DNA of 64,000 nucleotides, from the NCBI GenBank assembly GCA_002269645.1, contig NIVC01000023.1, forward strand, positions 1,449,713 through 1,513,712, written 5' to 3'. The stretch comes from Macrostomum lignano (taxonomy: Eukaryota). A program made the position numbers and the translations under genes. Below the pieces are notes generated by a model. That model worked only from the letters and a program-made list of their open reading frames with translations, searched no databases and had not been told where the DNA came from. This document shows positions 3,114 through 59,980 of the stretch, one piece after another (positions within the stretch are counted from its first letter, which is position 1; each line of letters opens with the position of its first letter).

Positions 3114-3811
3114 TCACGTGACCGTCTCGTGAACGCCGACAGCTGACGGACCGGCTGTGCTTGACGACTGGGCGCCAACGAGCAGCAACGATCTGGACGA
3201 GCGCGGCCGAGCCAAACTGCTGCCAGACGTTGGCTCGCAGCCGCTGTCGAAATCTGTGGAGCTGGGACTCTTCTGGCCGGTGAAGGTGCTGCACAGAGGG
3301 ACCGCCTGTTGCTGCTGGTATGAGAGCTGCTGTTGCAGCAAAACCCGTTGCGCGTGCCTACTCCCACGCGAACTGGTCAATGATGACTGCTGTTGAGTCA
3401 ATAATTGCTGCTCCTGCAACTGTTGGAGACGCTGATGATTGTGCAAATAGCAGGCCTGCGAATCGTAACCATGACAACGCAGGTGCTCTACAGAGTCGCC
3501 GCTACTCGCGCTGCCAGTGTTATAGTCGCTAGTTTCTGTTGGCTGCTGCTGCTGCTGCTGCTGCTGTGGCTTCTGCTTTTGCCGTTTCTGCTGCTGCTGG
3601 GTAAACTGAGACAGCTGTTGTATTGGCTGGTAGGAGCGCTGGTGCTGCAGCAGAGGGAACCGGCTGTTGCCGTTCCCCATAGCAACCGCATTACCCCCAC
3701 CGCCGCCACCATTGACAATGAGATCCGGCTCGCTTCGATGGGCGTTATTACCGTTGCCATAGCGACTTAAACGTTGAGAAGATTTTCGACGCAACTGCAA
3801 CTGATCAGCCG

Positions 3812-3842
<31 letters not shown>

Positions 3843-35153: not shown

Positions 35154-38100
35154 GGTTATGAGTCCAGCCCAGCACACTTCCACTGCGCGTAAGTGGTAGC
35201 TGATACAGAAGCCTCGCTCAGACGGAAAATAGGCTTGTTCTCGACACGAACTTTCCGAAGAAATGGCGGATGATAAGTTTCCAGTCGACAAGCTGGGAAG
35301 CGGAAACTGGACTACCTGGAAGATCCAGATCAAGTTATGTCTTATAGCGAGGAAGCTCTGGGGAGTCGTCGACGGTTCCGTAATTCTCGCAGAGTATGCC
35401 ACTCAGGAGCAAGAAAACGAATTTCGAGAGCAGCAACAGAGAGCTGCTGCAGTGATCGTTCTGTCAATCGAGAAAGAGCTCATCTATCTAATAACTTCGT
35501 GTGGCGAAGATCCACATCGGATGCGGCAATCCCTCAAACAGTAATTCGAACGAGATTCAACCGCCAATAAGATCTACGTATTTGAAGAAACAGCTTTTCC
35601 GGCTGCAGATGAGTGAAGGGACCCGCGTACAGGAGCATATGCGCCATATGAAGGAGCCGACCGACAAACTGGCCTCTATCAACTCACCTGTCAGTGAAGA
35701 GGACCAAGTGGTCATGCTGCTAAGCAGCCTGCCTGAGAGCTACTCTATCTTGGTTACTGCCTTGGAAGCTCTCGGTGATGATCTTACTCTGCCGATGGTT
35801 CACCAAGCACTCATCAACGAGGAGCAAAAGCGAAATGAATTAGGTGAGCGAGTGTCTGGTGATACACAGGGTGGAGAGTTTGCACTGAAGATCAAAAAAG
35901 GCCAAGGTCTGCCGCGTCGTGTTGTCAAATGTTTCAATTGCGGAAAGATGGGTCACTTTGCTCGAGACTGTCGTTCAGAAGGAGCGAAAAAGTTCGTCAA
36001 GGACCACACCGACAAACCTGCACGGTATGTCGCCAAAACAGCCGATGGTGCTGCTACCCAGGACATCGCCGAAACCTCGCTTGATAACGACGCACCTAAA
36101 AGCTGCCACGAGACATTCTTTATGTCGCTTGCGAAGACCAGCTCTGACATATCCACCTGGATAATTGACTCTGGAGCGTTCTGCCACATGACATACTCTA
36201 GAGAGCTACTAGTCAACTATAAGCAGTTTGGACGACCTGAAAGGTTCAGCCTAGGTGATGGTCGAACAGTCGAGGCCTGCGGCAGTGGTCAGGTAAAACT
36301 CATTATGCTCCTGCCACATGGCAAGCGTTTCAAGACAGTTATAACAGATGTACTTCTAGTGCCTCAACTGTCGTGCAATCTGTTTAGTGCTCGAGCAGCA
36401 GCAGCAAAGGATTAAGTGATACAGTTCGGTCACTCAAAATGCTGGATTCGCAACAAGGCTGAACTCCTTGTTGGAAAGGGATCTGTTGTTAGCAGAATGT
36501 ACCAGCTTGACTGTGAAGTAAAATTGCCGGCGAACGCTGGGACAATGGCAACTGCTGATTCCCCAGACACAAGTGCAACTTTATGGCACCAGCGTCTTGG
36601 TCATGTCAACGAACACCAACTAAATCAAATGAGCAAAGACCAACTCGTGAGCGGCATCTGTAAGTTGCAGACTGCATGTATAGACTTTTGTGAAGGATGT
36701 ATCGAGGGAAAAATGCACTGCAAGCCTCATAGGTCGATTTCCAAAATCCGCTCTACCGAAAGGCTACAACTAATTGACAGCGACATGCGGTCCTATGCAA
36801 ACAGAGTCATTTAATGGAAACAAGTACTTTGTCACCTTTATTGATGACTACTCACGCTGCGTTAAGATTTTCTTCATGCAACAAAGCTCAGAAGTGCTTG
36901 ATAAGTTTAAGAAGTTTGAGGCCATGGTTGCAACAGAAGCAGGACTCAAACTCAAAGCATTGCAAACTGACGGCGGCGGAGAGTATGCATCAAGTCAATT
37001 TACAAAATTCCTGGAGCAGAAGGGCATTCGGCATGAGACTACCGTGGCTCATACACTTCAGCAAAATGACGTTGCCGAACGGATGAATCGCACCTTCGTT
37101 GAATCAGCCCGTACAATGATGGCCTATGCTGGAGTAAGCAACTAGTTCTGGGCAGAAGCAGTAAACACCGCAGCTTATGTGCAAAATAGAGTCGTGACGA
37201 GTGCTCTTACTCCGCAAATGACGCCATACCAGAGTTGGTATGGGCGCAAGCTCGACGTTGAGCACTTTCGAGTTTTCGGCTGCGTAGCCTATGCCCACGT
37301 ACCAGATGTGAAGCTAAAGAAGCTACACAAGAAGGCCGAAAAGCTATGGTTCGTTGGCTACAATACGGATGGAAGAAGCTACAGACTGTTTGATGAAAGG
37401 TTGAGAAAGACAGTCATCCGCTACGATGTGGTGTTCAACGAGACTTATTTTGGAACCTCAAAAAATGGAACAAGAGACAAGGACGCGAGCTGGTTCAACT
37501 TGGAACTTGATAAGCCCAAATATGACAGAAGAGACACCAGGTCAAGAACAGGAACAATCGGTGTCGACAGAAACTGATCAGAAGCGATATCCTCAACGAG
37601 AAAGGAGAGCCCCTGACCGTCTCAAATATGAAGGTGCAAAAGTGGCATCTGAAGCCAAACACTTTGCGTTCAGAATGACCAAAATTATCGAACCGAAAAC
37701 GATTGACGAAGCCCTGAAAGGAGACTATGCAAAGTAATGGAAAGCTGCCGCTGACTCAGAATATAATTCCCTGATGGAGAATGAAACCTGGGATCTGGTA
37801 CGACTACCTGAAGGACGTAAGGCAATCGGATGTAAATGGATCTTTAAGGTCAAGTATGACGGTGATGGCAGGGTATATCGTTTTAAGGGAAGACTTGTAG
37901 CCAAGGGCTATTCACAGAAGTTTGGCATTGATTATGAAGAGACCTTTGCGCCAGTTGTAAAATTCCTATCTGTTCGCGCAATGTTGGCATTAGCGGCTAA
38001 ACATGAATTACACGTTCATCAGATGGACGTTGTAACTGCCTTTTTGAACGGCGAATTGTGCGAAGCAATTTACATGGAGCAGCCACCCGGTTTCGTCAAG

Positions 38101-39316
38101 CCAGGAGAGGAAGAGCTGGTCTGCAAGTTAAAGAAGTCGCTTTATGGACCTAAGCAAGCGCCCCGTTGCTGGAACAAAGCCTTTTGCGACTACCTAGCCA
38201 GAATTAACTTCGACGAAAGCTCAGCCGACAGGAGGATCTCACTACCCTAGCCGTATACGTTGACGACCGAATACTAATTGCGAAGAGTCTGGTGGAAATA
38301 CAACAAATCAAGGATGAACTTTCCAAAAGGTTCAAGATGAAAAACATGGGCGAGTTGCACTACTGTCTAGGTGTCAACATCCAAGCAAACAAGCAGGAGG
38401 ACCGCTGTATCAAGCTTAATCAGAAGCAGTACATAACCAAACTGCTTGAACGCTATGGACTTGCAGAGGCGAACCCAGCCCTAACTCCGATGGATTTCAA
38501 CGTAAAACTAGCAAAATACAACGAGGGCAGCAAGCCAGTTGACTCAAAAGTTTACCAGTCAATGGTCGGAAGCTTGCTTTATGCAGCAACTGCTACGCGT
38601 CCAGACATCTCGTATGCAGTGGGAGTTGTTTCTAAGTTCAACAACAAACCAAGAGAAATACATCTAACCGCAGTGAAACGAATCTTCCGATACCTAAAGG
38701 GAACAATCGACTTTGGCCTAGAGTACAACTCTGGTGTAGAGAACTTGATCCACTATTCTGATGCGGACTGGGCGAGTGACGTAGATAATCGACATTCCAC
38801 CTCTGGCATCGTGTTTAAGCTATCGGGTGGCGCTATCAGCTGGCTTAGCAAGAAGCAATCAACCGTCACACTCTCAACAACGGAAGCTGAGTACGTCGCG
38901 CTGAGCTCTGCAGCACAAGAAGCCATGTGGCTGCGGCGGCAACTAAGTGATCTTGAAAGATCAGGATCTGAGCGACACACTGTGATCTACGAGGACAACC
39001 AAGGAACTATTTATTGCTCTTTCTGAGAATTCTGCTGGAAGCCGACGGACAAAGCACATTGATATCAGACATCATTTAATTCGCGAAGCCGTCAGCAATG
39101 GACTATTCGAGTGCCCTACTGTCCAACTGGCGATATGGTTGCAGATGTGCTTACTAAGCCGTTACCCAAGGACAAGTTCATGCAGCTGCGAACAATGCTT
39201 AGGGTTGTTAAAACGTAACAGAGGAGTCTGAATTTACTGAAATCTTAATCAGAACTTTGTGAAAACTCGACATTTTTTGTAATCGCATACATAAACAATT
39301 TCATTAAATGGGATCG

Positions 39317-39539: not shown

Positions 39540-42500
39540 CCGGTTACATTCAAGGACAAGACGAGCGCAGTCACCTTCCACGTGGCGGAGGGCAGCATAA
39601 GCCTTCTAGGCCGCCCGGGCTTCCAGCCGTTCGGAGTGACCCTTAATGTCAACCAGCTGCAAGAGGGCGAACTCCAGGTGCATGACAGCTTCAAGAGCCT
39701 GTTCGGACCAGTCTGGCGGGCCAAAGGCATCGTACACAAGCCGAAGCTCAAGTCGGATGATACTTGTACAGTCATCCAAGCACGCCGCAAGATTCCACTA
39801 GCGATGAAGAAGGCGGTCAGGGCAGGACTCAAACGACTGGAGGCCGAGCAGATCATCGACAATGTCGGCGCAAGCGCCTGGGTGAGCAACATGGTCATCG
39901 CATCAAAGAGCGACGGCAAGATCTGACTGTGCCTTGACCTGCGGGATGGTAACAAAGCAATCATCGCGGATGCCTACCCGACGCCAGCCATCGACGAACT
40001 TGCAGCAGAGTTCAGGGAGTCCAAGGTCTTCTCGAAGCTAGACATGAAGACGGGCTATCTTCAGTTTGAACTGCAAGAGGGCAGCCGACACTTGAACGCG
40101 TTCATAACGGACGAGGGGCTATACCATTTTCACTGCGTCCCGTTCGGTCTCAGCAGCGCGGCAGGATTCTACCAAAAGCCATGGCCCGCGAGTTGCAAGA
40201 ACTCCCAGGAACCGTCAACGCAATCGATGACATCCTATAGTCCACGGCAAGACCCGACAAGAGCGCGACAGCAAACTGCGACGAACGTTAGAACGACTAC
40301 AGGAGTACAACATCACCCTCAACGACAAGTGCGTCTTGGGCCAATCGGCCGTCGACTTCCACGGCTTCAGGATATCAGCATTCCGCTGATGAGCATCACG
40401 AGCACCCCGGCGACAGCGTGGGAGGATGCGGCGAGTTCAAACGGCGGGCACCAAGGCACCAACGATTCGCGATCGTCCTGGTTGACAAATTTAGCCGTTT
40501 GGCCAGAGGTCGCGCTGGTGGAAACTGTCACCACGAAGTCCATCATCAACTTCCTCGAGATCACCTGGACGAGATGGGGCACTCAAAAGAGCATCACGAC
40601 AGACAACGGACCCCAGTTCGGGCATGAGTTCGACGACTAACTAGACGGCAGAGCGGTCGAGCACAAAAGAACAGCGGTCTACTGCCCGGAGCAGAACGGC
40701 AACGTCGAGCGCTTCAAAAATATGCTAGGCGAGGGCAGTAGACCGAGGGTTTCAGCGACGCCGTCCGAGAGGTCATCGCCGCCTACAGAGCGACAAGGAG
40801 CGACGTCACGGGTTCGAGCCCACTTGTGCGTTGAATTCAGCTACGCCATAGACACTCGTGCGCTACGAGCACTCGTGATCTAGGCGTTGCTGAATTTAGC
40901 ACACTCGTGCCCCCCACCCATTATCCCGAGTTCCGACCTCGTCTAACCACCCATTATCCAATGTTTGATAATGACTGATTATCACACGCTATATCACTGC
41001 GACATCTAGCCACTCGTGACAGTTGATCATTATCCACCAATGAAACCGTATAGACAACAAACTATTGTTGGCAATTCGTCGTCGCACTTCCACTTGTAGC
41101 CAGAGTCGTCACGCACTGTTACGAACTCATGTCATAAATAAACAAAATGTAAAAAATTGCAACAAGTTTTAAGTTCAATATAACAAAACAGCAGCCCCTG
41201 AGATCGAGCTAAATAATTGTATCGCAGAAGTGAAACCAAAATGACAAACAGCAAAATTTCTGCATATTATTTTCATAGAAACCTAAACTAAGCGCATATT
41301 TTCGATTGGTAAACAATTAATAGCAAACAGACACAGGGTTTCGCATCTGAGAAAATGAAAGAGCCACTACATGTACAAATAATTAAAAACCACAAAACCA
41401 GAATATTGAGTGGTTTTTTGATAGATAAGTATAAGCAATCACAAACAATATTAAAAACCAATCGAGTTCATTAAATTGTCGAACGATGTCCATAAATTGA
41501 ATTTTAGCTACAACAACAAAGGAAAAGCAAGTATTTTTTTTTAAAATTTAGTCTAAAATTGTGAAAAAAATTGGAAAAATATGGAATACCACAGACCATC
41601 ATAAAACTAAAATTGGGTTGATAAAATTCTGGTGGAAAGGATTAGCTAAATAATAATTAAAGTACACGTAAAAAACCATCGAGATAAGCGCAAACAAAAC
41701 TTTGATAGGTAAACTATATTTACAAGTCAGTAGCTATAAAAAAGGCCGAGCTATAATCCAGGTGCCAATTCTGACACGCAAAAATAACCGCCTGTTTTAA
41801 ACCACTTTTTAATTATAGCAATGAAACAAAAACACAACGGATAACATTGAAAATCGCCTATTTAAGCTCGAATTTTGGTTCGGTTAATAAGTCTAATTAC
41901 TCTAATCTGCTATGTACTGCCTACTTTAATAAGTAGCTAAGCGTCGTGTAACGTGACAAGTGAAGCATGATACGACGAACTCTAGTGATTAAAAAATAAT
42001 GCCGGAAAAAATCTATACTCTTTGAAACTAGAAAACAGTAGTAACGACACGCGTGTACGAAATAAGTTTAATATATTCATAAATAAAACACAAAGACGGC
42101 CTAAGTAGACCCGAAAAACTTCTTACAGTAAGTATACTAAGTACACTATCGAGATACGCGGGCTCAATTTTTTTCGACAGAAAAAGACAACTATTTAGAA
42201 TATAATATGCCCGTATTTTAGTTCAACGTACTTGCTTATTTTATTCATTTCTACAAAGCTTTCTATGAAATCAAATCGTAAGTAATAATTTGATTTTGCA
42301 CTATTGACTAAATTGACTTAAAATTTACAATTTAGTTCATGAATTTTATATAGCTATTTCTCCTACATTTTCATTACTTTTATGAAACTTTTTTTTTCAA
42401 AAGTTACCTTTTATTTTAGTATATGGATTGCAAAAAGTTTTATTTAAAAATGTTAGATTTCTTTAAAAAATTAATCTTTTCGTGCCCTGCTTATTTAAAT

Positions 42501-43438: not shown

Positions 43439-46400
43439 TCACGCGAGCTCAGCTTTGAGCTGCAACCCGGCTAAGCACTCATCCCCACCTCCACCTCCTC
43501 CACCGTCGTTGGACGCCTCCACGTTGCAGGCGTCGTCTGCTGTCTCGCAGAACACTTTTTTGAACAGTTCGGGCACAGCGTTGGAACTCGGCGGGGCGTC
43601 GAATCGCATTGACAGCACGGCGTCGCCTTGGCGAGTCACTATGGTGCGCAGGTCCGTCACCTGGGGGCATACAGTGGAGCGTTAAGCATCCTCAGACTCC
43701 TCAGATCAGCACATAGGTGTACAGCGGCCATTGACTTTCTAATCGTCAGATATTTGCACTCTTGTCGTGTGAATCGCGCAACAACCTTCCAGCACGCTAT
43801 CAAACCAAGGGTCGTGGCGCTTAGACGCGATAAGCGATAAGCCGCTCTGCCCTCCCCCGCCCTACTGCTTAGCCGCCAATCATTGTTACTAAAAATAGTA
43901 TAGAGGACTAGCTGGAAAACCCCTCAGCGGGTCAGTGGTTAATGCATCCATGGCCAACCCCCCAAGGCGCAGAGTGTACATGTCTGACCGATAAGAAAAT
44001 CAATGGGTCGCTTTACACCTGTGTGAACGTATGTATGAGTGCGTGCCTGCGTATAGTATTAGCTTAGCTTGTATGTGTGCTCAGGAGTCAGCGAAATAGG
44101 CAGAATTGCCGTTAGCGCTGATTGTAGGACAATTTTGCCGAAGGCGTTGCGTCAGGGTGCTCGCAGCCCTCTCTTCAATTACACGCTACTAAAAGAATTA
44201 ACACACTTAACACCTAGACCTCTTACCTTCATAAGAATCTTAGCCCAGTCAACGCCTCGCCTGCACCGTTTCTCCGTCACGTAGCGCTTGAATGCGCTCA
44301 AAATGGCGTCCTGCATCGACTCGATCCGGTCAGGATGCTGCAGACCCATGCGATCGCTCTGCATCAGTAGGACTCCTACAACAACGGCGAGATTCGGAAT
44401 GAAAAAAGATAGTTTTGTGAGTTTATTAGAATGATTCAAATCGAGATATGAAAAGGCGCCTCTCACCTGCCAGCAGGGCCACTTCTTGCTGGTCGAGTTC
44501 GAGTCGGTTCAGGCTAGCCGCGAATTCCCACAGAGGCTCGAGGAAGTCGCTGAGCAGTTTGTCGCTTCCAGTCTCGTCGCCGCCGAATGTCATGAAGCTG
44601 CTACCGCTGATCCTGTCACGCTGTTGAATATATCGACAGGCCGATCGAAGGCAGAGGATCTCCATGCAGCTGCACTTGAGCAGCTGAAACTGGTCCGTCT
44701 GGCTTAGCTGTTCGGAAAAAAGGTAAAATAGGATCGGTAAGAGGTCATCGTGTCCTATTTTGATGTCAGCTTAGAGTCTTCAGCTCTGCTATGATGCCAT
44801 CCCTGACTCCATGGAGTCTTCAGCTCTGCTATGATGCCATCCCTGACTCCATGGAGTCTTCAGCTCTGCTATGATGCCATCCCTGATTCCATGGAGTCTT
44901 CAGCTCTGCTATGATGCCATCCCTGACTCCATGGAGTCTTCAGCTCTGCTATGATGCCATCCCTGACTCCATGGAGTCTTCAGCTCTGCTATGATGCCAT
45001 CCCTGATTCCATGGAGTCTTCAGCTCTGCTATGATGCCATCCCTGACTCCATGGAGTCTTCAGCTCTGCTATGATGCCATCCCTGACTCCATGGAGTCTT
45101 CAGCTCTGCTATGATGCCATCCCTGATTCCATGGAGTCTTCCGCCCTGCACTGTGTGATGTCATCATATATACGCGACATTCCTTTGGATAGCACCATGA
45201 AGTCTATCATCCAACCAGCAAACCGAAACCAAAATATTTACCGAACGAAACCCGACCACTCCTTCGGCGAACTTGACAACCCCGGAGGCTGCACTGGACA
45301 TCACTTGGGTCAGGCTGTCAAAAACGCTTGGCGCCTCCTGTCTGTACACGGCCACGTCATCGTCTTCAACTTGCTCGGACTGTAAAAATAGTATACTACT
45401 AGAGCGTTATGGACATACAAATATTAGAGATTTAGTATATTTTGGATAATAGTATAGTATAGTATAGCATTTTTACTACTGTTACAAACTACACTACTGA
45501 TAGTAGAAATATAGAAAAAAACGCGTTATTTAATGATCTTAGACGGATAATAACAGACCTTGCTCATTAGAGAGCAGACCACGTGACGCGAGAGCTGATC
45601 TACTAAATCTGGACACGGCGAGGTCGGTCCAAATTGTTGACGACGACAACTCGGCCGATTGGTTGCGCGGTTCTGCGAGGCAGAATGGATAATCTTGGTA
45701 AAGTTATGCACGGAAGTAGTTGCTCAAATTAAAGCATTATGGACAAGCGTGGTACCTGCGGTCTAGGCTTACTGGTTTTGTCTACTCTTAGAACTTAGTG
45801 GATTTTCTGGGTATATTGGTAGATTTTGCTGCCACCAGGTCCTTGATTTCCCTAATTCTAGTTTGTAGATATTAAAGAAGTGAGTCAGGACAACGATAGT
45901 AATTTAAACACAAGTTTATAAAGAGAACACAAATTAGTTAACGTAAGTTGTACAAAAGTTGTTTACATTAATTTCCTATACTCCCTTATATGCTTTTGGG
46001 CAAGACTCCCAATGTTTTCGAGGCAAGACTCCTCTTTGTGCAAGCCTATTTCATTCCTATTTCCCTATCTTCCCTATTCCCCCTTTACTTTGAATTCCTC
46101 GGCTAATTTCTAAGTTAAAAGTGTCGCAACAGATGCTTGCCCAAGAGCCCAACTGCTCTTTACTAGTAATAAAGTTCCAAAATTAGCGATCTTCTCCTGC
46201 TCTAATTATTCACCCTAGCTAAAACTACTGTTAGTAGCGTAAAAGCATAATTGAATTCCCCCGCTAAATTAATGCCCTACTACAATTAATTATATTATGC
46301 TTGTGCTAAATACTCGTACTTCTAACACAAACTTGACATCAATAACTTTCCTGAAATTTCTCGAAGATAATAATTAAATTTATTTATCTCGAAGATAATA

Positions 46401-49400
46401 ATTAAACGTTACGTAACTCTTACGGATTGAAATTACCAATGCATGCATGTGTATCGAAAAAAAGCATCGAAATAAACAGAAGTTTGATTGCGTCAACTAT
46501 ATGTATAGAAAAAAAATTTAATTATGTCCCCGATATGTATCAAAAATTCTATAAACAAATTCACTAATATCCCGATATGTATCGAAAATGCATTACAGGA
46601 ATTCACTAATGTCCCCGATATGTATCGAAAATGCTATAAGCGAATCCACTAATGTCCCCGATATGTATCGAAAATGCTATAAGCAAATTCACTAATGTCT
46701 CCGATGTGTATCGAAAATGCTATAAGCGAATCCACTAATGTCCCCGCCCCAATATGTATCGAAAATGCTATAAGCAAATTCACTAATGTCTCCGATGTGT
46801 ATCGAAAATGCTATAAGCGAATCCACTAATGTCCCCGATATGTATCGAAAATGCTATAAGCAAATTCACTAATGTCTCCGATGTGTATCGAAAATGCTAT
46901 AATTGCGAATTCACTAATGTCCCCGATATGTATCGAAAATAGTGTTTGAACAGCATGACTTACCCCGAAACCGTCGCCGCTAATTTCATCTGACGACGAC
47001 AGTGGCAACGGCAGCGCCTGCGACTGTCCAAGACGGGTCGGCCACGCCAGCCGATAGGAGGTGGCAAAGCCGTCGATGATCGCTCGATCGTCGTCGCCGA
47101 TGTCCCAGGAGTCCTCGGAGCCGCAGCAGCTGAAGCCGCCGCCGACGCCAGGAGCAGCCGCTGCCGACGCAGCGGACGCCGATGCGGGGAGTTCCTCTTT
47201 TGCCGACGGCTTCTTGCAAGGCTCGCCGGCGCTTCGACGCTGTCGATTCTCTTCGATGAGCTTCCGCTTAGCGACTCGCTGCCTCTCGTTGAGCACCACT
47301 GCGATGGGGGGAGAGGGAGCATTGGGAACTCATTTTGAGAGTTTATGTAAGTCCCTAGATAATTTTTCTATGGAATCAATGAATCAAGAGTTCCCAGTCC
47401 AGATTTATTAAGAGGGGGTCACAGGCCCCCAGTCCGGATTCATTAAGAGGGGGGTCACAGGCCCCCAGTCCGGATTCATTAAGAGGGGGGTCACAGGCCC
47501 CCAGTCCAGGTATTTATTAAAGGGATCCCAACTAGTCCCATTCTGATCAGTATGGGATCACAAGTCCCATTCTGAGTATGGGATCACAGGTCTCATTCTG
47601 ATCAGTATGGGATCACAGGTCTCATTCTGATCAGTATGGGAGCACAGGTCTCATTCTGATCAGTATGGGATCACAGGTCTCATTCTGATCAGTATGGGAG
47701 CACAGGTCCCATTCTGAGGTAGGAATCACAAGTCGCATTCTGAGTATGGGATCACAGGTCCCATTCTGTTCAGTACGGGATTACAAGTCCCATTCTGAGT
47801 ATGGGATCACAAGTCCCATTCTGAGTATGGGATCACAGGTCCCATTCCGAGTATGGAATCACAGGTCCCAATTCTGAGGTTGGGATCACGGGTCCCAATT
47901 CTGAGGTTGAGATCACAGGTTCCAATTCTGAGGTTGGGATCACAAGTCCCATTCTGAGTATGGGATCACAGGTCCCAATTCTGAGGTTGGGATCACAAGT
48001 CCCATTCTGAGTATGGGATCACAGGTCCCATTCTGAGTATGGAATCACAGGTCCCAATTCTGAGGTTGGGATCACAAGTCCCATTCTGAGTATGGGATCA
48101 CAGGTCCCATTCTGAGTATGGAATCACAAGTCCCATTCTGAGGTTGGGATCACAGGTCCCATTCTGAGTATGGGATCACAGGTCCCATTCTGAGTATGGA
48201 ATCACAGGTCCCAATTCTGAGGTTGGGATCACAAGTCCCATTCTGAGTATGGGATCACAGGTCCCAATTCCGAAATCCAACAGTCAGACTTACAGTCGGC
48301 AGCCATGCCCATTGCCAGGCACTTTTTAAACCGGCACTGCTGGCACTGGTTGCGAGTGTTCTTGTCAATCTGACAGCTCTCGTTCCATTTGCAGTGGTAT
48401 TGCAATTTCTTCTGAATTGTTCGTCGAAAGAAGCCCTGCAATAAATAATGATCACGCGGGGCTTGATGTTGTTTTAAATCATTTCTGAACTACTTTATTA
48501 ATAAAAAGATTGATTTTAAGCGTCTGACTACTAAGAGTACTCTACTAGAGTAAAAACCAGTAGAACTAGAACTGACTACTATAACATCTGAATGACCTGA
48601 GTTAACTAACATGACACCTGAATGACCTGAGATAACTACTATGACACCTGAATGACCTGAGGTAACTACTATGACACCTGAATGACCTGAGGTAACTACT
48701 ATGACACTTGAATGACCTAAGGTAACTACTATGACACCTGAATGACCTGAGGTAACTACTATGACACCTGAATGACCTGAGGTAACTACTATGACCCCTG
48801 AATGACCTGAGGTAACTACTATGACACTTGAATGACCTGACGAGGTAACTACTATGACACCTGAATGACCTGACGAGGTAACTACTATGACACCTGAATG
48901 ACCTGAGGTAACTACTATGACACCTGAATGACCTGAGGTAACTACTATGACACTTGAATGACCTAAGGTAACTACTATGACACCTGAATGACCTGAGGTA
49001 ACTACTATGACACCTGAATGACCTGAGGTAACTACTATGACCCCTGAATGACCTGAGGTAACTACTATGACACCTGAATGACCTGACGAGGTAACTACTA
49101 TGACACCTGAATGACCTGACGAGGTAACTACTATGACACCTGAATGACCTGAGGTAACTACTATGACACCTGAATGACCTGAGGTAACTACTATGACCCC
49201 TGAATGACCTGAGGTAACTACTATGACACCTGAATGACCTGAGGTAACTACTATGACCCCTGAATGACCTGAGGTAACTACTATGACACTTGAATGACCT
49301 GAGGTAACTACTATGACACTTGAATGACCTGAGGTAACTACTCTGACACCTAAATGACGGGAGTTAACTACTCTGACACCTGAATGACCTGAGGTAACTA

Positions 49401-50561
49401 CTCTGACACCTGAATGACCTGAGGTAACTACTCTGACACCTGAATGACTTGAGATAACTACTATGACCCCTGAATGACCTGAGGTAACTACTATGACCCC
49501 TGAATGACCTGAGATAACTACTATGACACCTGAATGACCTGAGGTAACTACTATGACACCTGAATGACCTGAGGTAACTACTATGACCCCTGAATGACCT
49601 GAGATAACTACTATGACACCTGAATGACCTGAGGTAACTACTATGACCCCTGAATGACCTGAGGTAACTACTATGACCCCTGAATGACCTGAGGTAACTA
49701 CTATGACCCCTGAATGACCGGATTTAACCACGACCTTTGTCATAGTATCTTGATGAAATATACTATAAATTACAGAATATCCTATTAAGAGTACAAACAT
49801 TTGTTAAGAATTGTATTAACTATAAATTTCCTGTCATTCGGAACCTGATTGTGTAACAGCTACAAACTAGCTAAGGAGGCCACTGCGAAAAACACAGGAA
49901 AAGACACGTTGAGATCGAGCGTTGCTGCACCTCACGCACCCCAACAACCCTAAAAGCCGAATTGAAACGCAATAGAAAAATAAAGTCTTTAGTTGGGGCT
50001 GAGTGGTGGACACAGTTCGGAATAACAACAGGCAGGTTTTAAACTGGCCGAGGTCATGAACCTGCCAATAAAAACCTTTTCTCTTTTCTCTCTCTATCTC
50101 TCTTTCCTTTCGTTCCGAATTTCGAATTTTGCCCTTTCTCTAGTTGTCAACGCAATCTGGGGTCGGCACGCATTCTATATGCACACTATATGAAATTCGG
50201 TTACGTAATATGCGCGGCAGTAAATAGATTGAGGGAGAGAGAGAGAGAGAAAAGGTTAACGAGCAAGAGCTGTTTAAAATCAGATTTTTTAATAGGTAAA
50301 CCTATGGGGTTGGCACTTATGAATGTAAATCGCACGATAATCCACCGACAATCGCGCGACAATACATATCAAGGTTGTCGCAGTACATGATTAGTAGCTC
50401 ACCTTGCAGCCTTCGCAGGTCATGCAACGATAATGATAACCTGTGGCGGCATCGTTGCACACAATGCACGGCTCGGGTCCATTTGACAGGTCCATGTAGC
50501 TTGGGATGTAGGGCGTGCCTGCGCGTGTGAACAGGAAAAACGCGTGTAGTAGTAGTAGTAA

Positions 50562-50629
<68 letters not shown>

Positions 50630-50633
50630 ATAA

Positions 50634-50677
<44 letters not shown>

Positions 50678-52003
50678 ATAGTAGTAGTAGTAGTAGTAGT
50701 AGTTATTGTAGTAGTAGTAGTAGTAGTAGTAGTAGTTATTGTAGTAGTAGTAGTAATAGTAATTCTCTATTTGAGTAGAGGCAGATCAACATGTCATTTA
50801 TTATCACCCCATAAATAATGTCGCACAGCTCCCGGAAAGCCCCGAGAACAGATGTTGAATTTCTCAGATCTATAAAAAGCAGCAAGTTCGACTATGGATA
50901 CGAAAAAACTGTCGTAGTAAACAAGGCCTTGACGCAACGGCTTGCAATCAGTTAAACAAACCTCGGCGTTACGTAATCAGTTTGGGAGCACAACGAATAC
51001 TGTGACAGCAATAGTCCATAGCAGCTGACAGCTGCTGCACCGAATACATGTAGGGACGAACATTCGTCAAAGAAAAATTGATGAGCAAATGCTACCCCTA
51101 GAAGCAATGACGGATGATGCTTGTTAAACTCGATTTACAAGCAAGCTGGGAAACTGGCTGAAACAGCCCTTTGTATAAAAGTATGTAGTAACAACGATAT
51201 AAAATTACTTCGTTGAAGGCTCACAATAGGACCCAATGACCCCATGACGAAGCAATGACCGACCACTGTATGGGGTATTGACAAACCACTGTATGACCCC
51301 ATGACGGAGAGCGCAATGACGAACCACTGTATGACCCCATGACGGAGAGCGCAATGACGAACCACTGTATGACCCCATGACGGAGAGCGCAATGACAAAC
51401 CACTGTATGACCCCATGACGGAGAGCGCAATGACAAACCACTGTATGACCCCATGACGGAGAGCGCAATGACGAACCACTGTATGACCCCATGACGGAGA
51501 GCGCAATGACGAACCACTGTATGACCCCATGACGGAGAGCGCAATGACAAACCACTGTATGACCCCATGACGGAGAGCGCAATGACAAACCACTGTATGA
51601 CCCCATGACGGAGAGCGCAATGACAAGCCACCGTATGACCCCATGACGGAGAGCGCAATGACAAGCCACTGAATGACCCCATGACGGAGTAATGACAAAC
51701 CACAGCATGACCCTACAAAGTATACAAACGAAAACGCAGAACAGTTTAACTCATTCATTCCACAAAGCCACAAAAAAAACTAAAAAACAGACTCCTTTGT
51801 GAATTATAAACAGCTCATAACGGGTGCACTCACTTCCGTTTCTTGTTTTTCCACGTCGACCATTTTTGGCAGCGGAGCTTTCGTCTTCAGTAGTTGTACT
51901 CGGCTGTAGCTGCTTCTGACTGGGACTTCGTTTGCCTCCTCCGACGCCACCACTGCTGCTGCCTCCGCCGCTGCCTCCGCTGACCGTCTGGCTTCGCTGA
52001 CGG

Positions 52004-52039
<36 letters not shown>

Positions 52040-53387
52040 CTCGAAGCTGCTGTCATGGACGACGAAGGCGTCAGATAGACTGTGTTTCTTCTAGGTGGCA
52101 GCATTGACGCAAGCTGCTGCTGCTGCTGCTGGGTATGCAGGTAGATTGACTGAGCTTGAAGACGCTGCTGCTGCTGCTGCATCAGGCCAGGTGGAGTCAC
52201 CGTCGGTGAAGTTGACGACGACACCGATGAGTTCGGTGGCGAGGCCGGCAGGAAGCAGCCGGTGGCGGCGTTAGGAACAGCCGCCGCTGCCACCGCGGTC
52301 AGCGTCCCGTCGTGTGCGTACAGCGGCGGCGGCGGTGGCGGCTGAGGCATCGGGCCTTGAATTCGCAGCTGACCCTGGTGATGATGCTGATGATGCTGAT
52401 GATGATGAATGTGCTGATGCTGTTGCGAGGCGGGCAGTTGCAGGGTCGGCTGCATTGCGGTTGCGTAGAAAGAATCCGATTGTTGTGCATAGTGCTGCTG
52501 CTGCTGCTGCTGCTGCTGCTGGCTGCAGGATAGGCTTGTCTGTAAAATTTGTTTTAGACTTCATGAATGTACGAGTATATTTGTATATGTATCAATTGTT
52601 TGATGCAGAATGACAGTGACTGCCCTCTGAAGGACTATTTGGGACAGAGGGGCTACAGCAATACCCGCTGAAGGAAACATGTGTAGCAATACCCTCAACC
52701 CGCAGCATAGCAGCAATACCCAAAGCATAGCAGCAATACCCAAAGCATAGCAACAATACCCAAAGCATAGCAGCAATACTCACAGCTTAGCAGCAATACC
52801 CGCAGCTTAGCAGCAATACCCGCAGCTTAGCAGCAATACCCATGGGATAGCATGCAGCAATACCCACAGCATAGCAGCAATACCCGCAGCTTAGCAGCAA
52901 TACCCATGGGATAGCAGCAATACCCACAGCATAGCAGCAATACCCATTGGATAGCAGCAATACCAGTGGGCTAGCAACTTTCAAACTTGCAGACACAGAC
53001 AACTTGCACAGGTAAATCAGCACTCACCTGACTGTAATCTGCCACCAGAGCCGACGAGATCAACGGCAAGTCAGCGTCGATACCGTCATCGTGTTGATCT
53101 GTCACCATAGGCTGATCCTCATCGTCAGTGTAGTGAGCGGCCACCAGAGCCGAGGCTGGCACCGTCCCGCCAACCTGGCCAACAATACACTCGCCCCTAT
53201 TCGAACCGGTAACTAGGCAGCTCGGCTGCAAATAATAATCAACCGAATTGAACATTAGCAACGAGGCGTCGGAGGCGGCGGAGGCAGCGGAGGCGGCGCT
53301 GTTCAAACCTCCGCCGATGCCAACCGGTTCAAGCTTGACAAGACTCGAACCCGAGCTGAGTCGACAAGCTGGCTGAGACGAGGACAT
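43439..53387 (-). CDS. THR: Thyroid hormone receptor (NR1A) orthologue, 802 aa; exons 53387-53028, 52539-51834, 50518-50403, 48435-48294, 47298-46964, 45379-45242, 44707-44467, 44375-44227, 43660-43439
   Basis: All nine GT-AG exons join in phase (2409 bp, 803 codons). TR N-terminal signature [33 protein letters not shown]|GFFRRTIQK...[32 protein letters not shown] box [66 protein letters not shown]-2 ELFKKVF. An in-frame TAA lies just upstream of the ATG. Confidence 0.95.
44778..45145. repeat. 40-bp minisatellite (GAGTCTTCAGCTCTGCTATGATGCCATCCCTGACTCCATG), TR intron
   Basis: About 9 near-identical units. Confidence 0.95.
46520..46945. repeat. 43-bp minisatellite (AATGTCCCCGATATGTATCGAAAATGCTATAAGCAAATTCACT), TR intron
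   Basis: About 9-10 units abutting the donor at 46963. Confidence 0.92.
47410..48270. repeat. Short ~35-bp triplicate followed by a 26-bp minisatellite (TCTGAGTATGGGATCACAGGTCCCAT), TR intron
   Basis: Seen directly; about 27 units. Confidence 0.92.
48575..49725. repeat. 30-bp minisatellite (ATGACACCTGAATGACCTGAGGTAACTACT), TR intron
   Basis: About 38 units. It explains ORF 48490..49800 ([10 protein letters not shown] repeats). Confidence 0.95.
50546..50760. repeat. (AGT)n microsatellite upstream of the first zinc-finger exon acceptor
   Basis: Seen directly. Confidence 0.97.
51230..51715. repeat. 38-bp minisatellite (ATGACCCCATGACGGAGAGCGCAATGACAAACCACTGT), TR intron
   Basis: About 11 units. 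Confidence 0.95.
52670..52965. repeat. 20-bp minisatellite (CAGCAATACCCACAGCATAG), TR intron
   Basis: About 13 units. Confidence 0.9.
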
Positions 53388-56124: not shown

Positions 56125-58640
56125 TAATAGGCCCAGTATCTGAGGATCTGGGAGGCTGGCCCAGTATCTGAGGACTCTGGGAGGCTGGCCCAGTATCTGA
56201 GGGCTCTGGGAGGCTGGCCCAGTATCTGAGGACTTTGGGAGGCTGGCCCAGTATCTGAGGACTCTGGGAGGCTGGCCCAGTATCTGAGGACTCTGGGAGG
56301 CTGGCCCAGTATCTGAGGACTCTGGGAGGCTGGCCCAGTATCTGAGGACTCTGGGAGGCTGGCCCAGTATCTGAGGACTCTGGGAGGCTGGCCCAGTATC
56401 TGAGGACTCTGGGAGGCTGGCCCAGTATCTGAGGACTCAGGGAGGCTGGCCCAGTATCTGAGGACTCTGGGAGGCTGGCCCAGTATCTGAGGACTCTGGG
56501 AGGCTGGCCCAGTATCTGAGGACTCTGGAGGCTGGCCCAGTATCTGACGACTCTGGGAGGCTGGCCCAGTATCTGAGGACTCTGGGAGGCTGGCCCAGTA
56601 TCTGAGGACTCTGGGAGGCTGGCCCAGTATCTGAGGACTCTGGGAGGCTGGCCCAGTATCTGAGGACTCTGGGAGGCTGGCCCAGTATCTGAGGACTCTG
56701 GGAGGCTGGCCCAGTATCTGAGGACTCTGGGAGGCTGGCCCAGTATCTGAGGACTCTGGGAGGCTGGCCCAGTATCTGAGGATTTTGGGAGGCTGGCCCA
56801 GCAACTGAGAATCTAGGAGGCTGGTCCAGCAACTGAGGATCTGGAAGGCTGGCCTAGCAACTGACACTCTGGGAGGCTGGCCCAGCAACTGAGGATCTAG
56901 GAGGCTGGCCCAGCAACTGAGGATCTAGGAGGCTGGCCCAGTATCTGAGGACTCTGGGAGGCTGGCCCAGCAACTGAGGATTTTGGGAGGCTGGCCCAGC
57001 AACTGAGAATCTAGGAGGCTGGTCCAGCAACTGAGGATCTGGAAGGCTGGCCTAGCAACTGACACTCTGGGAGGCTGGCCCAGCAACTGAGGATCTAGGA
57101 GGCTGGTCCAGTATCTGAGGACTTTGGGAGGCTGGCCCAGTATCTGAGGACTCTGGGAGGCTGGCCCAGTATCTGAGGACTCTGGGAGGCTGGCCCAGTA
57201 TCTGAGGACTCTGGGAGGCTGGCCCAGTATCTGAGGACTCTGGGAGGCTGGCCCAGTATCTGAGGACTCTGGGAGGCTGGCCCAGTATCTGAGGACTTTG
57301 GGAGGCTGGCCCAGTATCTGAGGACTCTGGGAGGCTGGCCCAGTATCTGAGGACTCTGGGAGGCTGGCCCAGTATCTGAGGACTCTGGGAGGCTGGCCCA
57401 GTATCTGAGGACTCTGGGAGGCTGGCCCAGTATCTGAGGACTCTGGGAGGCTGGCCCAGTATCTGAGGACTCTGGGAGGCTGGCCCAGTATCTGAGGACT
57501 CTGGGAGGCTGGCCCAGTATCTGAGGACTTTGGGAGGCTGGCCCAGTATCTGAGGACTTTGGGAGGCTGGCCCAGTATCTGAGGACTCTGGGAGGCTGGC
57601 CCAGTATCTGAGGACTCTGGGAGGCTGGCCCAGTATCTGAGGACTCTGGGAGGCTGGCCCAGTATCTGAGGACTCTGGGAGGCTGGCCCAGTATCTGAGG
57701 ATTTTGGGAGGCTGGCCCAGTATCTGAGGACTCTGGAGGCTGGCCCAGTATCTGAGGACTCTGGGAGGCTGGCCCAGTATCTGAGGACTCTGGGAGGCTG
57801 GCCCAGTATCTGAGGACTCTGGGAGGCTGGCCCAGTATCTGAGGACTCTGGGAGGCTGGCCCAGTATCTGAGGACTCTGGGAGGCTGGCCCAGTATCTGA
57901 GGACTCTGGGAGGCTGGCCCAGTATCTGAGGACTTAGGGAGGCTGGCCCAGTATCTGAGGACTCTGGGAGGCTGGCCCAGTATCTGAGGACTCTGGGAGG
58001 CTGGCCCAGTATCTGAGGACTCTGGGAGGCTGGCCCAGTATCTGAGGACTCTGGGAGGCTGGCCCAGTATCTGAGGATTTTGGGAGGCTGGCCCAGTATC
58101 TGAGGACTTTGGGAGGCTGGCCCAGTATCTGAGGACTTTGGGAGGCTGGCCCAGTATCTGAGGACTTTGGGAGGCTGGCCCAGTATCTGAGGACTTTGGG
58201 AGGCTGGCCCAGTATCTGGGGACTTTGGGAGGCTGGCCCAGTATCTGAGGACTTTGGGAGGCTGGCCCAGTATCTGAGGACTTTGGGAGGCTGGCCCAGT
58301 ATCTGAGGACTTTGGGAGGCTGGCCCAGTATCTGAGGACTTAGGGAGGCTGGCCCAGTATCTGAGGACTTTGGGAGGCTGGCCCAGTATCTGAGGACTTT
58401 GGGAGGCTGGCCCAGTATCTGAGGACTTAGGGAGGCTGGCCCAGTATCTGAGGACTTTGGGAGGCTGGCCCAGTATCTGAGGACTTTGGGAGGCTGGCCT
58501 AGAAACTGAGGACTTTGGGAGGCTGGCCTAGAAACTGAGGACTTTGGGAGGCTGGCCCAGCAACTGAGGATCAGGGAGGCTGGCCCAGCAGCTGAGGATC
58601 TGGGAGGCTGGCCCAGCAGGGAGGTCAGGGAGGTTGGCGA
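56125..58640. repeat. 29/28-bp minisatellite (CTGGGAGGCTGGCCCAGTATCTGAGGACT), about 2.5 kb
   Basis: More than 80 units. It explains ORFs 56046..56888 and 56925..58649. Confidence 0.96.
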
Positions 58641-59758: not shown

Positions 59759-59948
59759 TTAGCTATAATACTCGTAGAACAAGAAAACCAATAATAAACA
59801 CGATCTGTTGTAGTAAAGCACGCAGTTACGCGGAACCGTAGTAGTTGGAGTTGTGATAGATAGCTTGCTGTCCAGGCGTGCTGCTGTTATAGTTAACAGA
59901 CGCAGAGGGCTGCTTGCAGAAGATGTAGAAGCATTAGTGTACGAATAT

Positions 59949-59980
<32 letters not shown>

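What the first reader, a model, noticed from the sequence alone, without database searches (positions are those of the whole stretch)
43550..45271. Thyroid hormone receptor with an apparently reversed coactivator charge clamp (helix 3 K->E, helix 12 E->K)
Seen: helix 3 reads [11 protein letters not shown] (Glu codon 45263-45265) and helix 12 reads ELFKKVF (Lys codon 43556-43558). Known: vertebrate TRbeta has VVDFAKKLPMF (K288) and PLFLEVF (E457), the Lys/Glu pair that caps LxxLL coactivator helices. A swapped pair is a recognised feature of the ligand-independent NR4A receptors (Nurr1/DHR38). Inference: a reciprocal swap in an otherwise intact TR gene suggests compensatory evolution, and a receptor with a non-canonical cofactor surface or ligand-independent activity. 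I know of no description of this in a TR.
Basis: partly seen in the sequence, partly recalled or inferred. Interest (0 to 1): 0.78.

Follow-up and report, generated by a model that had tools for sequence, protein, structure and literature searches.

The report
Divergent thyroid receptor, reversed cofactor clamp
An intact thyroid-hormone-receptor gene of an unidentified non-chordate animal carries Glu and Lys where almost all related receptors carry Lys and Glu to grip coactivators, so it probably no longer works as a classical hormone-switched activator; this is unusual but has not been tested.

Summary
The minus strand of 43439-52455 carries an eight-exon nuclear-receptor gene in which all seven introns have GT..AG ends. 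By DNA-binding domain, the TR-specific N-terminal signature, T/A box, tree position and four shared intron positions, it is a non-chordate thyroid hormone receptor (NR1A) orthologue. Three independent alignments and a position-weight test place Glu (45265-45263) at the hTRbeta K288 position of helix 3 and Lys (43558-43556) at the E457 position of helix 12. No other receptor had this pair among about 150 representatives of NR1-type receptors drawn from 1.84 billion proteins. That set includes TRs of annelids, bivalves, a crinoid, vertebrates, tunicates, a priapulid, tardigrades, Trichuris and flatworm-like TRs. Nurr1 aligns with the same E/K pair.

The interpretation needs trimming. The receptor is not "otherwise intact". 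Its DNA-binding domain is conserved (about 81% identity to annelid and mollusc TRs), but its ligand-binding domain has evolved fast (45-47% against 78-84% among those TRs). It has lost T3 anchor residues (R282G, H435Q). "Compensatory" is unsupported, because the two residues do not touch. Chance expectation at this divergence is about 0.6%, and other fast-evolving TRs also lose clamp residues. The most likely outcome is loss of canonical LxxLL coactivator docking. The finding is moderately interesting and is a new variant of a known kind.

The parts
51834..52455 (-). Putative A/B-domain exon. It is Gln/His/Ala-rich, has a candidate ATG at 52455 and ends ...GRRGKTRNG + A | gtgagt in phase 1.
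   Evidence: ORF list and sequence. The donor GT at 51833 in phase 1 joins the GC at 50518-50517 to make a Ser codon in front of TPYIPSY. The true start codon and any further 5' exons were not established.
50403..50518 (-). Exon carrying the TR N-terminal signature ([15 protein letters not shown]) and the first zinc finger, up to CEGCK.
   Evidence: tblastn with hTRbeta, Capitella TR at 90% identity and oyster TR; splice sites.
48294..48435 (-). Exon carrying the second zinc finger ([47 protein letters not shown]).
   Evidence: Pfam zf-C4 E=8.5e-31.
46964..47298 (-). Exon carrying the T/A box ([22 protein letters not shown]), the hinge and helix 1.
   Evidence: AF2 helix at residues 2-17 of the LBD model.
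45242..45379 (-). Exon carrying helix 3.
45263..45265 (-). GAA, the Glu at the hTRbeta K288 position (helix-3 arm of the charge clamp).
44467..44707 (-). Exon carrying helices 4-8. It includes the retained K306 equivalent ([18 protein letters not shown]) and the beta-turn region.
44227..44375 (-). Exon carrying helices 9-10 ([11 protein letters not shown]...WAKILMK). This is the best conserved LBD exon, 61% identical to Capitella TR.
43439..43660 (-). Last exon. It carries helix 11, the loop, helix 12 ([10 protein letters not shown]), a 36-residue acidic and Gly-rich tail, and the TGA stop at 43441-43439.
43556..43558 (-). AAA, the Lys at the hTRbeta E457 position (helix-12 arm of the charge clamp).

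Best explanation
This is a real, apparently functional, single-copy-in-window thyroid hormone receptor (NR1A) orthologue. It comes from a non-chordate animal that, on similarity, looks spiralian and is not represented in the protein databases searched. Its DNA-binding half is under normal constraint. Its ligand-binding domain has evolved about three times faster than in other spiralian TRs.

During that divergence the receptor lost two of the residues that anchor T3 in vertebrate TRs. It also inverted the AF-2 charge clamp (H3 Lys to Glu, H12 Glu to Lys), while keeping the LBD fold, the hydrophobic face of H12 and the H9-H10 region.

Inferred mechanism. The protein still binds AGGTCA-type elements and probably still pairs with RXR. 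It can no longer cap an LxxLL coactivator helix in the canonical orientation, as in hTRbeta E457 mutants and in NR4A receptors. It therefore most likely acts independently of thyroid hormone. It could act as a repressor or silent partner. It could also act through its long Gln-rich A/B domain or through its RXR partner.

Shown: gene structure, orthology, residue identities and their rarity, domain-specific acceleration, and a confident LBD fold. Inferred: loss of LxxLL docking, loss of T3 response, and the mode of transcriptional action.
For: Gene model. There are eight exons and all seven introns have GT..AG ends. No second H3 or H12 exon exists in the 64 kb.

TR identity. Pfam zf-C4 and Hormone_recep match. 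The DBD scores best against TRbeta in the PDB, 146 bits against 97 for RAR. The non-chordate TR signature PYIPSYM...GPE and Met16 are present and the chordate 2-residue insert is absent (compared with PMC2045677). In an NJ tree the protein falls inside the TR clade, next to annelid, mollusc and crinoid TRs, on a long branch. It shares four intron positions with Capitella TR.

Closest proteins. The nearest relatives are spiralian TRs at 46-48% LBD identity.

Domain asymmetry. DBD identity is 80-83%, against LBD identity of 45-47%.

Clamp. The window has E/K at positions 288/457, and this is unique among the distinct sequences compared. Groove residues V284, K306 and L454 are kept and I302 is Phe. 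H12 keeps the hydrophobic LF..VF pattern.

Ligand anchors. R282G, H435Q and N331S, with R316 and R320 kept.

Fold. AF2 gives pLDDT 82 and pTM 0.80, and Foldseek matches NR1 LBDs.

Functional precedent. hTRbeta E457A abolishes NCOA binding but keeps T3 and NCoR binding (PMC7351129; PMC2842432). Nurr1's reversed clamp prevents binding of typical coregulators (PMC10259986). Oyster TR, with a degenerate AF-2 core, represses and is not activated by T4, T3 or TRIAC (PMC4692385).
Against: There is no expression evidence, no sister-species sequence and no reads, so the constraint on the two residues is unknown. The hydrophobic groove is largely intact. A Lys (285) and a Glu (453) each sit one helical turn N-terminal of the canonical clamp positions, so some form of helix docking might survive. 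The H3 Lys also contacts corepressor helices in other receptors (from knowledge of PPARalpha/SMRT and RARalpha/NCoR structures), so a repressor role is not assured either. The list of T3-contact residues was recalled from memory. The AF2 model coordinates could not be inspected, so no distances were measured.
Confidence: 0.6

Rival explanations
1. Neutral erosion. The LBD is under relaxed constraint, either because the gene is on the way to becoming a DNA-binding-only factor or pseudogene, or because a canonical TR paralogue elsewhere in the genome covers the ancestral role. On this view the E/K pair is a coincidence of two easy transitions with no functional meaning of its own.
For: The acceleration is specific to the LBD. 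The joint chance of both changes is about 0.6% at average-rate sites, which is not negligible given the many fast-evolving TR lineages. Clamp residues are also lost in priapulid (E to A), tardigrade (K to L or A; E to T) and Trichuris (K to Q) TRs, and oyster TR carries a conservative Asp in place of the H12 Glu. JP4 is displaced and an extra intron is present, showing a generally derived gene.
Against: The reading frame is open through eight exons with canonical splice sites. The LBD signature, the hydrophobic core, H9-H10 and an amphipathic H12 are retained, and the domain is predicted to fold confidently. None of the other degenerate TRs has opposite charges at both positions.
Confidence: 0.2
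2. Adaptive re-polarised docking site. The swap is a co-selected pair that creates a surface for a helix bound in the opposite orientation, or for a non-LxxLL partner, convergently with NR4A.
For: The window has the same E/K pair as Nurr1 when both are aligned to one profile. The hydrophobic groove and H12 amphipathicity are kept. The pair is unique among about 150 representatives.
Against: The two residues do not contact each other, so there is no direct compensation to select for (established AF-2 structural knowledge). In NR4A the reversed clamp goes with loss of the site, not with reuse of it (PMC10259986). No relatives are available to show co-occurrence or the order of the changes.
Confidence: 0.12
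3. Displaced rather than reversed clamp. Lys285 (VVKFAEG against spiralian VVEFAKR) and Glu453 (PELF against PPLF) each lie one helical turn N-terminal of the canonical residues, take over capping, and leave LxxLL binding roughly intact.
For: The exchange of E285/K288 to K285/E288 within H3, and the appearance of Glu at 453, are visible in the alignment. Position 285 is K in only 2 of 71 distinct sequences and position 453 is E in only 1 of 45.
Against: Moving both caps by 5-6 Angstrom along two differently oriented helices is unlikely to keep the clamp spacing. The canonical positions would then carry the wrong charge right at the helix ends. No geometry could be measured here.
Confidence: 0.05
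4. Artefact. The two codons, or the exon assignment, result from assembly or sequencing error, or from a wrong helix-12 register.
For: No reads or transcripts are available. Every intron is full of minisatellites, which can disturb assemblies.
Against: The two codons are in different, non-repetitive exons and are surrounded by several other substitutions. The alternative register scores 19 bits worse. The splice model is unique, since other frames run into stops.
Confidence: 0.03

Closest known systems
Spiralian thyroid hormone receptors (NR1A), e.g. Capitella teleta CAPTEDRAFT_167148, Lamellibrachia satsuma KAI0240712, Crassostrea gigas CgTR AKE80988, Sinanodonta woodiana
   Same: They share the non-chordate NTSS, Met16, a DBD with no 2-residue insert and about 81% DBD identity. 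They also share the T/A box, four intron positions and the LBD signature and H9-H11 motifs such as [14 protein letters not shown].
   Different: Those TRs keep VVEFAK(R/N/G/Q)VPGF and PPLFLEMF (Lys and Glu; Asp in oyster) as well as His435. The window has [19 protein letters not shown] and Gln435. Its LBD identity to them is only 45-47%, against 78-84% among themselves. JP4 is shifted by 6 codons, there is an extra intron before VTDLR, and a 36-residue tail follows H12.
NR4A receptors (Nurr1/NR4A2, Nur77, NOR1, Drosophila DHR38)
   Same: They carry the same reversed pair, Glu in H3 (WAEKIPGF) and Lys in the AF-2 core (IIDKLF), at the same profile columns. The reversed clamp is described as preventing interaction with typical coregulators (PMC10259986). 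Like them, the window protein may pair with RXR and has a long N-terminal domain.
   Different: This is a different subfamily (NR4 against NR1A), so the resemblance would be convergent. In Nurr1 the pocket is filled and the groove is polar (Wang et al. 2003, from knowledge). Neither property has been shown here, and the groove residues V284, K306 and L454 are retained.
Engineered or natural AF-2-defective vertebrate TRs (hTRbeta E457A/K, K288A; TRalpha2; v-ErbA)
   Same: A change at the same clamp residue abolishes NCOA/p160 binding while leaving T3 binding and NCoR binding in place (PMC7351129). Such receptors behave as constitutive repressors or dominant negatives.
   Different: Those are single-site or C-terminal changes in an otherwise vertebrate LBD. 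Here both arms are changed, and so is the ligand pocket.
Other fast-evolving invertebrate TRs with degenerate AF-2 (Priapulus LLLAIF; Paramacrobiotus LFATMF with H3 Leu; Ramazzottius H3 Ala; Trichuris H3 Gln; Ciona NR1)
   Same: They are TR orthologues that have lost one or both clamp residues, and ligand activation by thyroid hormones is unproven or absent (PMC10083991).
   Different: They replace clamp residues with neutral ones. None carries the opposite charge at both positions.

Membership tests
Nuclear receptor superfamily | C4 zinc-finger DBD followed by a helical-sandwich LBD | tested here: met
   Pfam zf-C4 E=8.5e-31 and Hormone_recep E=7.6e-20. AF2 LBD model pLDDT 82, and Foldseek top hits are all NR1 LBDs.
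Thyroid hormone receptor (NR1A) | [quoted passage not shown] 2007) | tested here: met
   [17 protein letters not shown]. The definition is in PMC2045677. The spacer has four residues, as in Capitella and oyster.
Thyroid hormone receptor (NR1A) | DBD, P-box (EGCKG) and T/A box closest to TR rather than to RAR or other NR1 receptors | tested here: met
   In the PDB phmmer search, the TRbeta DBD scores 146 bits and the RARgamma DBD 97 bits. DBD and T/A box are 80-83% identical to annelid, mollusc and crinoid TRs.
Thyroid hormone receptor (NR1A) | Non-chordate TR marks: Met at DBD position 16 and no 2-residue insert at DBD positions 33-34 | tested here: met
   [16 protein letters not shown] has Met16, and KKLQ--YHC has no insert. 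The criteria are from PMC2045677.
Thyroid hormone receptor (NR1A) | Groups with TRs, not RARs, in a phylogeny of DBD plus LBD | tested here: met
   An NJ tree on 338 columns places it inside the TR clade on a long branch. This is a rough distance tree without support values. The LBD alone scores about equally against TR and RAR structures.
Thyroid hormone receptor (NR1A) | Conserved splice-junction positions JP1-JP4 (Wu et al. 2007) | tested here: inconclusive
   JP1 (CEGCK|GFF), JP2 (MAAD|LVLN), the hinge intron and JP3 (GFRS|LSQTDQ) coincide with Capitella TR. JP4 is 6 codons upstream of the canonical ...LLMQS|DR site, and there is an extra intron at ILMK|VTDLR.
Thyroid hormone receptor (NR1A) | T3/TRIAC-contacting residues (R282, R316, R320, N331, H435 of hTRbeta) and hormone binding | tested here: not met
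   The window has G, R, R, S and Q at these positions. Actual binding cannot be tested here. This defines the vertebrate function, not orthology, because many invertebrate TRs fail it as well (PMC4692385, PMC10083991).
Thyroid hormone receptor (NR1A) | Canonical AF-2: H3 Lys plus the H12 core with two hydrophobic residues, any residue, Glu, then two hydrophobic residues | tested here: not met
   H3 has Glu. The H12 core is LFKKVF, with Lys in place of Glu but the hydrophobic positions kept.
NR4A (Nurr1-like) receptors | Reversed charge clamp (H3 Glu, H12 Lys) | tested here: met
The description is in PMC10259986.
NR4A (Nurr1-like) receptors | NR4-type DBD and LBD sequence, and NR4 orthology | tested here: not met
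   The DBD, the NTSS and the tree all place it in NR1A. It therefore works like an NR4A at most, and is not a member.
NR4A (Nurr1-like) receptors | Ligand pocket filled by bulky side chains; ligand-independent activity | not testable with these tools

The most novel reading that the evidence does not exclude
A thyroid hormone receptor lineage has convergently evolved the NR4A-type inverted AF-2 charge clamp as a selected, fixed feature. This would create a cofactor surface of opposite polarity, for a reversed-orientation helix or a non-LxxLL partner, and turn an NR1A receptor into a hormone-independent regulator. It would be a natural experiment on how the polarity of the nuclear-receptor coactivator clamp can be rewired.
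Probability: 0.15. Interest if true: 0.65.

Novelty: new variant of a known kind. Interest (0 to 1): 0.4.

Why it matters
The Lys/Glu clamp is one of the most conserved functional features of nuclear receptors. It is at least 90% conserved in the 72-sequence alignment used here. Complete inversion is textbook only for NR4A, where it marks a receptor that has abandoned the classical coactivator site.

Finding the same inversion in an NR1A receptor would do three things. First, it would add an independent data point for how AF-2 can be remodelled. Second, it would give a natural double mutant for testing whether clamp polarity dictates helix orientation. Third, it would feed the open debate on whether invertebrate TRs are hormone receptors at all (PMC10083991). 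This TR is a strong candidate for a hormone-independent one.

The practical weight is limited. The species is unknown, there is a single sequence, and AF-2 degeneration in invertebrate TRs is already documented.

Tried and rejected
Searches that failed or found nothing:
- The search for homologous proteins with the full protein and with the LBD including low-complexity tails timed out.
- A single 80-residue exon found no candidate.
I therefore used a profile made of window exons plus spiralian TRs.
- A scan of metagenome contigs for close relatives found none.
- The Rfam scan of the window found nothing.
- Pfam on the neighbouring ORFs did not help to name the organism.

Modelling:
- Single-sequence AlphaFold2 was useless (pLDDT 46). 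The alignment-based run worked.
- Foldseek cannot separate TR from LXR or RAR folds.

Readings rejected:
- An alternative H12 register, [10 protein letters not shown] aligned to PPLFLEVFED, would restore a Glu at 457. It scores -10.9 against +8.3 bits and loses the hydrophobic residues at 458 and 459.
- An alternative canonical H3 or H12 exon, or a TRalpha2-like alternative 3' exon, could exist within the window. tblastn with three spiralian TRs found only one set of exons.
- The gene could be an RAR. The DBD, the NTSS and the tree all say TR.
Full report
WHAT IS THERE

The finding lies inside a multi-exon gene on the minus strand. Reading the sequence gives these exons:
- 52455?-51834 (A/B domain)
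- 50518-50403 (TR signature and zinc finger 1)
- 48435-48294 (zinc finger 2)
- 47298-46964 (T/A box, hinge, H1)
- 45379-45242 (H3)
- 44707-44467 (H4-H8)
- 44375-44227 (H9-H10)
- 43660-43439 (H11, H12, tail, TGA)

Every intron begins with GT and ends with AG, and the phases fit. The assembled protein from the signature motif onward is 446 residues and matches Pfam zf-C4 and Hormone_recep. No second copy of any TR exon is present in the 64 kb.

THE OBSERVATION

Helix 3 reads [13 protein letters not shown], with GAA at 45265-45263. Helix 12 reads [11 protein letters not shown], with the second AAA at 43558-43556.

Three alignments place these residues at hTRbeta K288 and E457: a MAFFT alignment with hTRbeta and six spiralian TRs, a profile-HMM alignment of 159 database proteins, and a 72-sequence MAFFT alignment.

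I tested the one alternative register that would rescue a Glu at 457 ([10 protein letters not shown] against PPLFLEVFED). I used a weight matrix built from 45 distinct H12 segments.

An AlphaFold2 model built on the 72-sequence alignment is confident (pLDDT 82, pTM 0.80). It has H3 at residues 63-84, which includes Glu83, and H12 starting at Glu251. Foldseek returns only NR1 LBDs.

WHAT IT IS

The DBD scores 146 bits against TRbeta and 97 bits against RARgamma. The protein carries the TR-specific N-terminal signature PYIPSYM...GPE. It also carries the non-chordate marks, namely Met16 and the absence of the chordate two-residue insert (compared with Wu et al. 2007, PMC2045677).

The only database proteins found with the LBD as query are spiralian TRs at 46-48% identity, from Capitella, Sinanodonta and unnamed fragments. 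An exhaustive profile search of 1.84 billion representatives gave nothing closer. The named representatives include TRs of oyster, Lamellibrachia, a crinoid, Priapulus, two tardigrades, Trichuris, Ciona and Styela, as well as invertebrate RARs. A rough NJ tree puts the window protein inside the TR clade, beside the annelid, mollusc and crinoid TRs, on a long branch.

Compared with the Capitella TR locus, four intron positions coincide: after CEGCK, after MA(A/T)D, in the hinge, and after GF(RS/LQ). The JP4 intron is six codons upstream of its canonical place, and there is an additional intron at ILMK|VTDLR.

The source species is not represented in the protein collections. I can only say that it is a non-chordate whose TR looks spiralian.

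HOW UNUSUAL

Among distinct sequences aligned to the profile, the K288 column is K in 64 of 71, R in 4, and Q, L and A once each. The E457 column is E in 38 of 45, D, T and N twice each, and A once. None has Glu in H3 or Lys in H12, let alone both.

The departures belong to fast-evolving TRs:
- oyster: QLLDLF;
- Priapulus: LLLAIF;
- Paramacrobiotus: H3 Leu, H12 LFATMF;
- Ramazzottius: H3 Ala;
- Trichuris: H3 Gln.
Flatworm-like TRs keep Arg and Glu (YFHELF).

This agrees with the published description of its reversed clamp (PMC10259986).

A crude expectation from BLOSUM target frequencies for K to E together with E to K at this divergence is about 0.6%. That is low, but not vanishing given how many divergent TR lineages exist.

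CONTEXT THAT CHANGES THE INTERPRETATION

The receptor is not otherwise intact. DBD and T/A-box identity to annelid, mollusc and crinoid TRs is 80-83%, the same as among those TRs. LBD identity is 45-47%, where annelid and mollusc TRs share 78-84%. The acceleration is therefore specific to the LBD.

Of the T3 anchor residues, R316 and R320 are kept, but R282 is Gly, H435 is Gln and N331 is Ser. The contact list was recalled from memory. Of the six residues that define the TRbeta coactivator surface (V284, K288, I302, K306, L454, E457; Feng et al. 1998, from knowledge), the window has V, E, F, K, L and K.

The neighbourhood is also remodelled. Spiralian VVEFAKR has become VVKFAEG, an i/i+3 exchange of Glu285 and Lys288. 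PPLFLEMFDE has become [10 protein letters not shown], with P453E, L456K and E457K. A 36-residue acidic and Gly-rich tail follows H12.

MECHANISM

From established structural knowledge, the H3 Lys caps the C-terminal carbonyls of the LxxLL helix and the H12 Glu caps its N-terminal amides. The two residues do not touch each other.

A reciprocal swap therefore does not compensate. It places like charges against the helix dipole at both ends. hTRbeta E457A loses NCOA binding while keeping T3 and NCoR binding (PMC7351129; PMC2842432). In Nurr1 the reversed clamp is held responsible for the failure to bind typical coregulators.

I therefore infer that this TR cannot dock p160-type coactivators canonically. 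Together with the altered pocket, this suggests it is not a T3-switched activator.

It probably still binds DNA, and it probably still pairs with RXR, because H9-H10 is the best conserved LBD exon at 61%. It may act as a repressor or silent partner, as unliganded oyster TR does (PMC4692385). Alternatively it may act through its Gln/His-rich A/B domain or through RXR. These last steps are inference.

RIVALS

- Neutral erosion of the LBD, with a coincidental pair (0.2).
- An adaptive re-polarised site (0.12).
- A clamp displaced by one turn to Lys285 and Glu453 (0.05).
- An artefact (0.03).
Without relatives, reads or assays, these cannot be separated further.

NOVELTY AND VERDICT

I found no description of a reversed clamp in a TR in the literature searches. 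The gene is a member of a known family (NR1A) with a feature known from another family (NR4A), so it is a new variant of a known kind.

The interest is moderate. The feature is real and rare. However, AF-2 degeneration and orphan-like behaviour of invertebrate TRs are already documented, the LBD is globally divergent, and the case rests on one sequence from an unidentified species.

Noticed in passing
window 44227-44467 (exon junctions at 44467/44375 and 44227/43660); L001 10391-11401: The JP4 intron is reported as invariant in position in nuclear-receptor genes (...LLMQS|DR...). Here it lies six codons upstream (ALLAG|VLLMQSDR). The gene also has an extra intron at ILMK|VTDLR, which Capitella TR and the ORF-like spiralian fragments P0007-P0012 lack. 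The extra intron is at the point where vertebrate TRalpha1 and TRalpha2 diverge (from knowledge).
   Followed up: partly
window 44774-45149, 46524-46940, 47535-48266, 48575-49719, 50546-50761, 51279-51689: Nearly every intron of the TR gene contains its own long, highly regular tandem array. The periods are 40, 43, 26, 30, 3 (GTA) and 38 bp, with 9-72 copies at 86-97% identity. Further arrays lie upstream, including 56130-58616 with period 29 and 86 copies.
   Followed up: partly
window 45263-45274 and 43556-43570: Besides K288E and E457K, the flanking charges are exchanged. Spiralian VVEFAKR becomes VVKFAEG (E285K), and PPLFLEMF becomes PELFKKVF (P453E, L456K). A Lys and a Glu therefore sit one helical turn N-terminal of the canonical clamp positions.
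   Followed up: partly
window 43439-43546: A 36-residue tail (an F domain) follows helix 12: [36 protein letters not shown]. Vertebrate TRs end right after H12. AlphaFold2 extends the H12 helix into the first part of this tail.
   Followed up: no
window 59759-61370 and 52971-53387 (minus strand): These are long Gln/His/Pro/Asn-rich open reading frames upstream of the TR gene on the same strand, with no Pfam match. They could be further 5' exons of a very long TR A/B domain or a separate low-complexity gene.
   Followed up: partly
window 35501-39026 (+) and 40044-40640 (+): This is a Copia-type LTR retrotransposon remnant downstream of the TR gene. It matches gag (Retrotran_gag_2), a zinc knuckle, the Pol beta-barrel domain and RVT_2, and a further retroelement-like ORF is adjacent.
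   Followed up: partly
window 3114-4838 (minus strand): This ORF has an immunoglobulin I-set domain (E=7e-17). It probably belongs to an exon of a neighbouring cell-surface Ig-superfamily gene.
   Followed up: no
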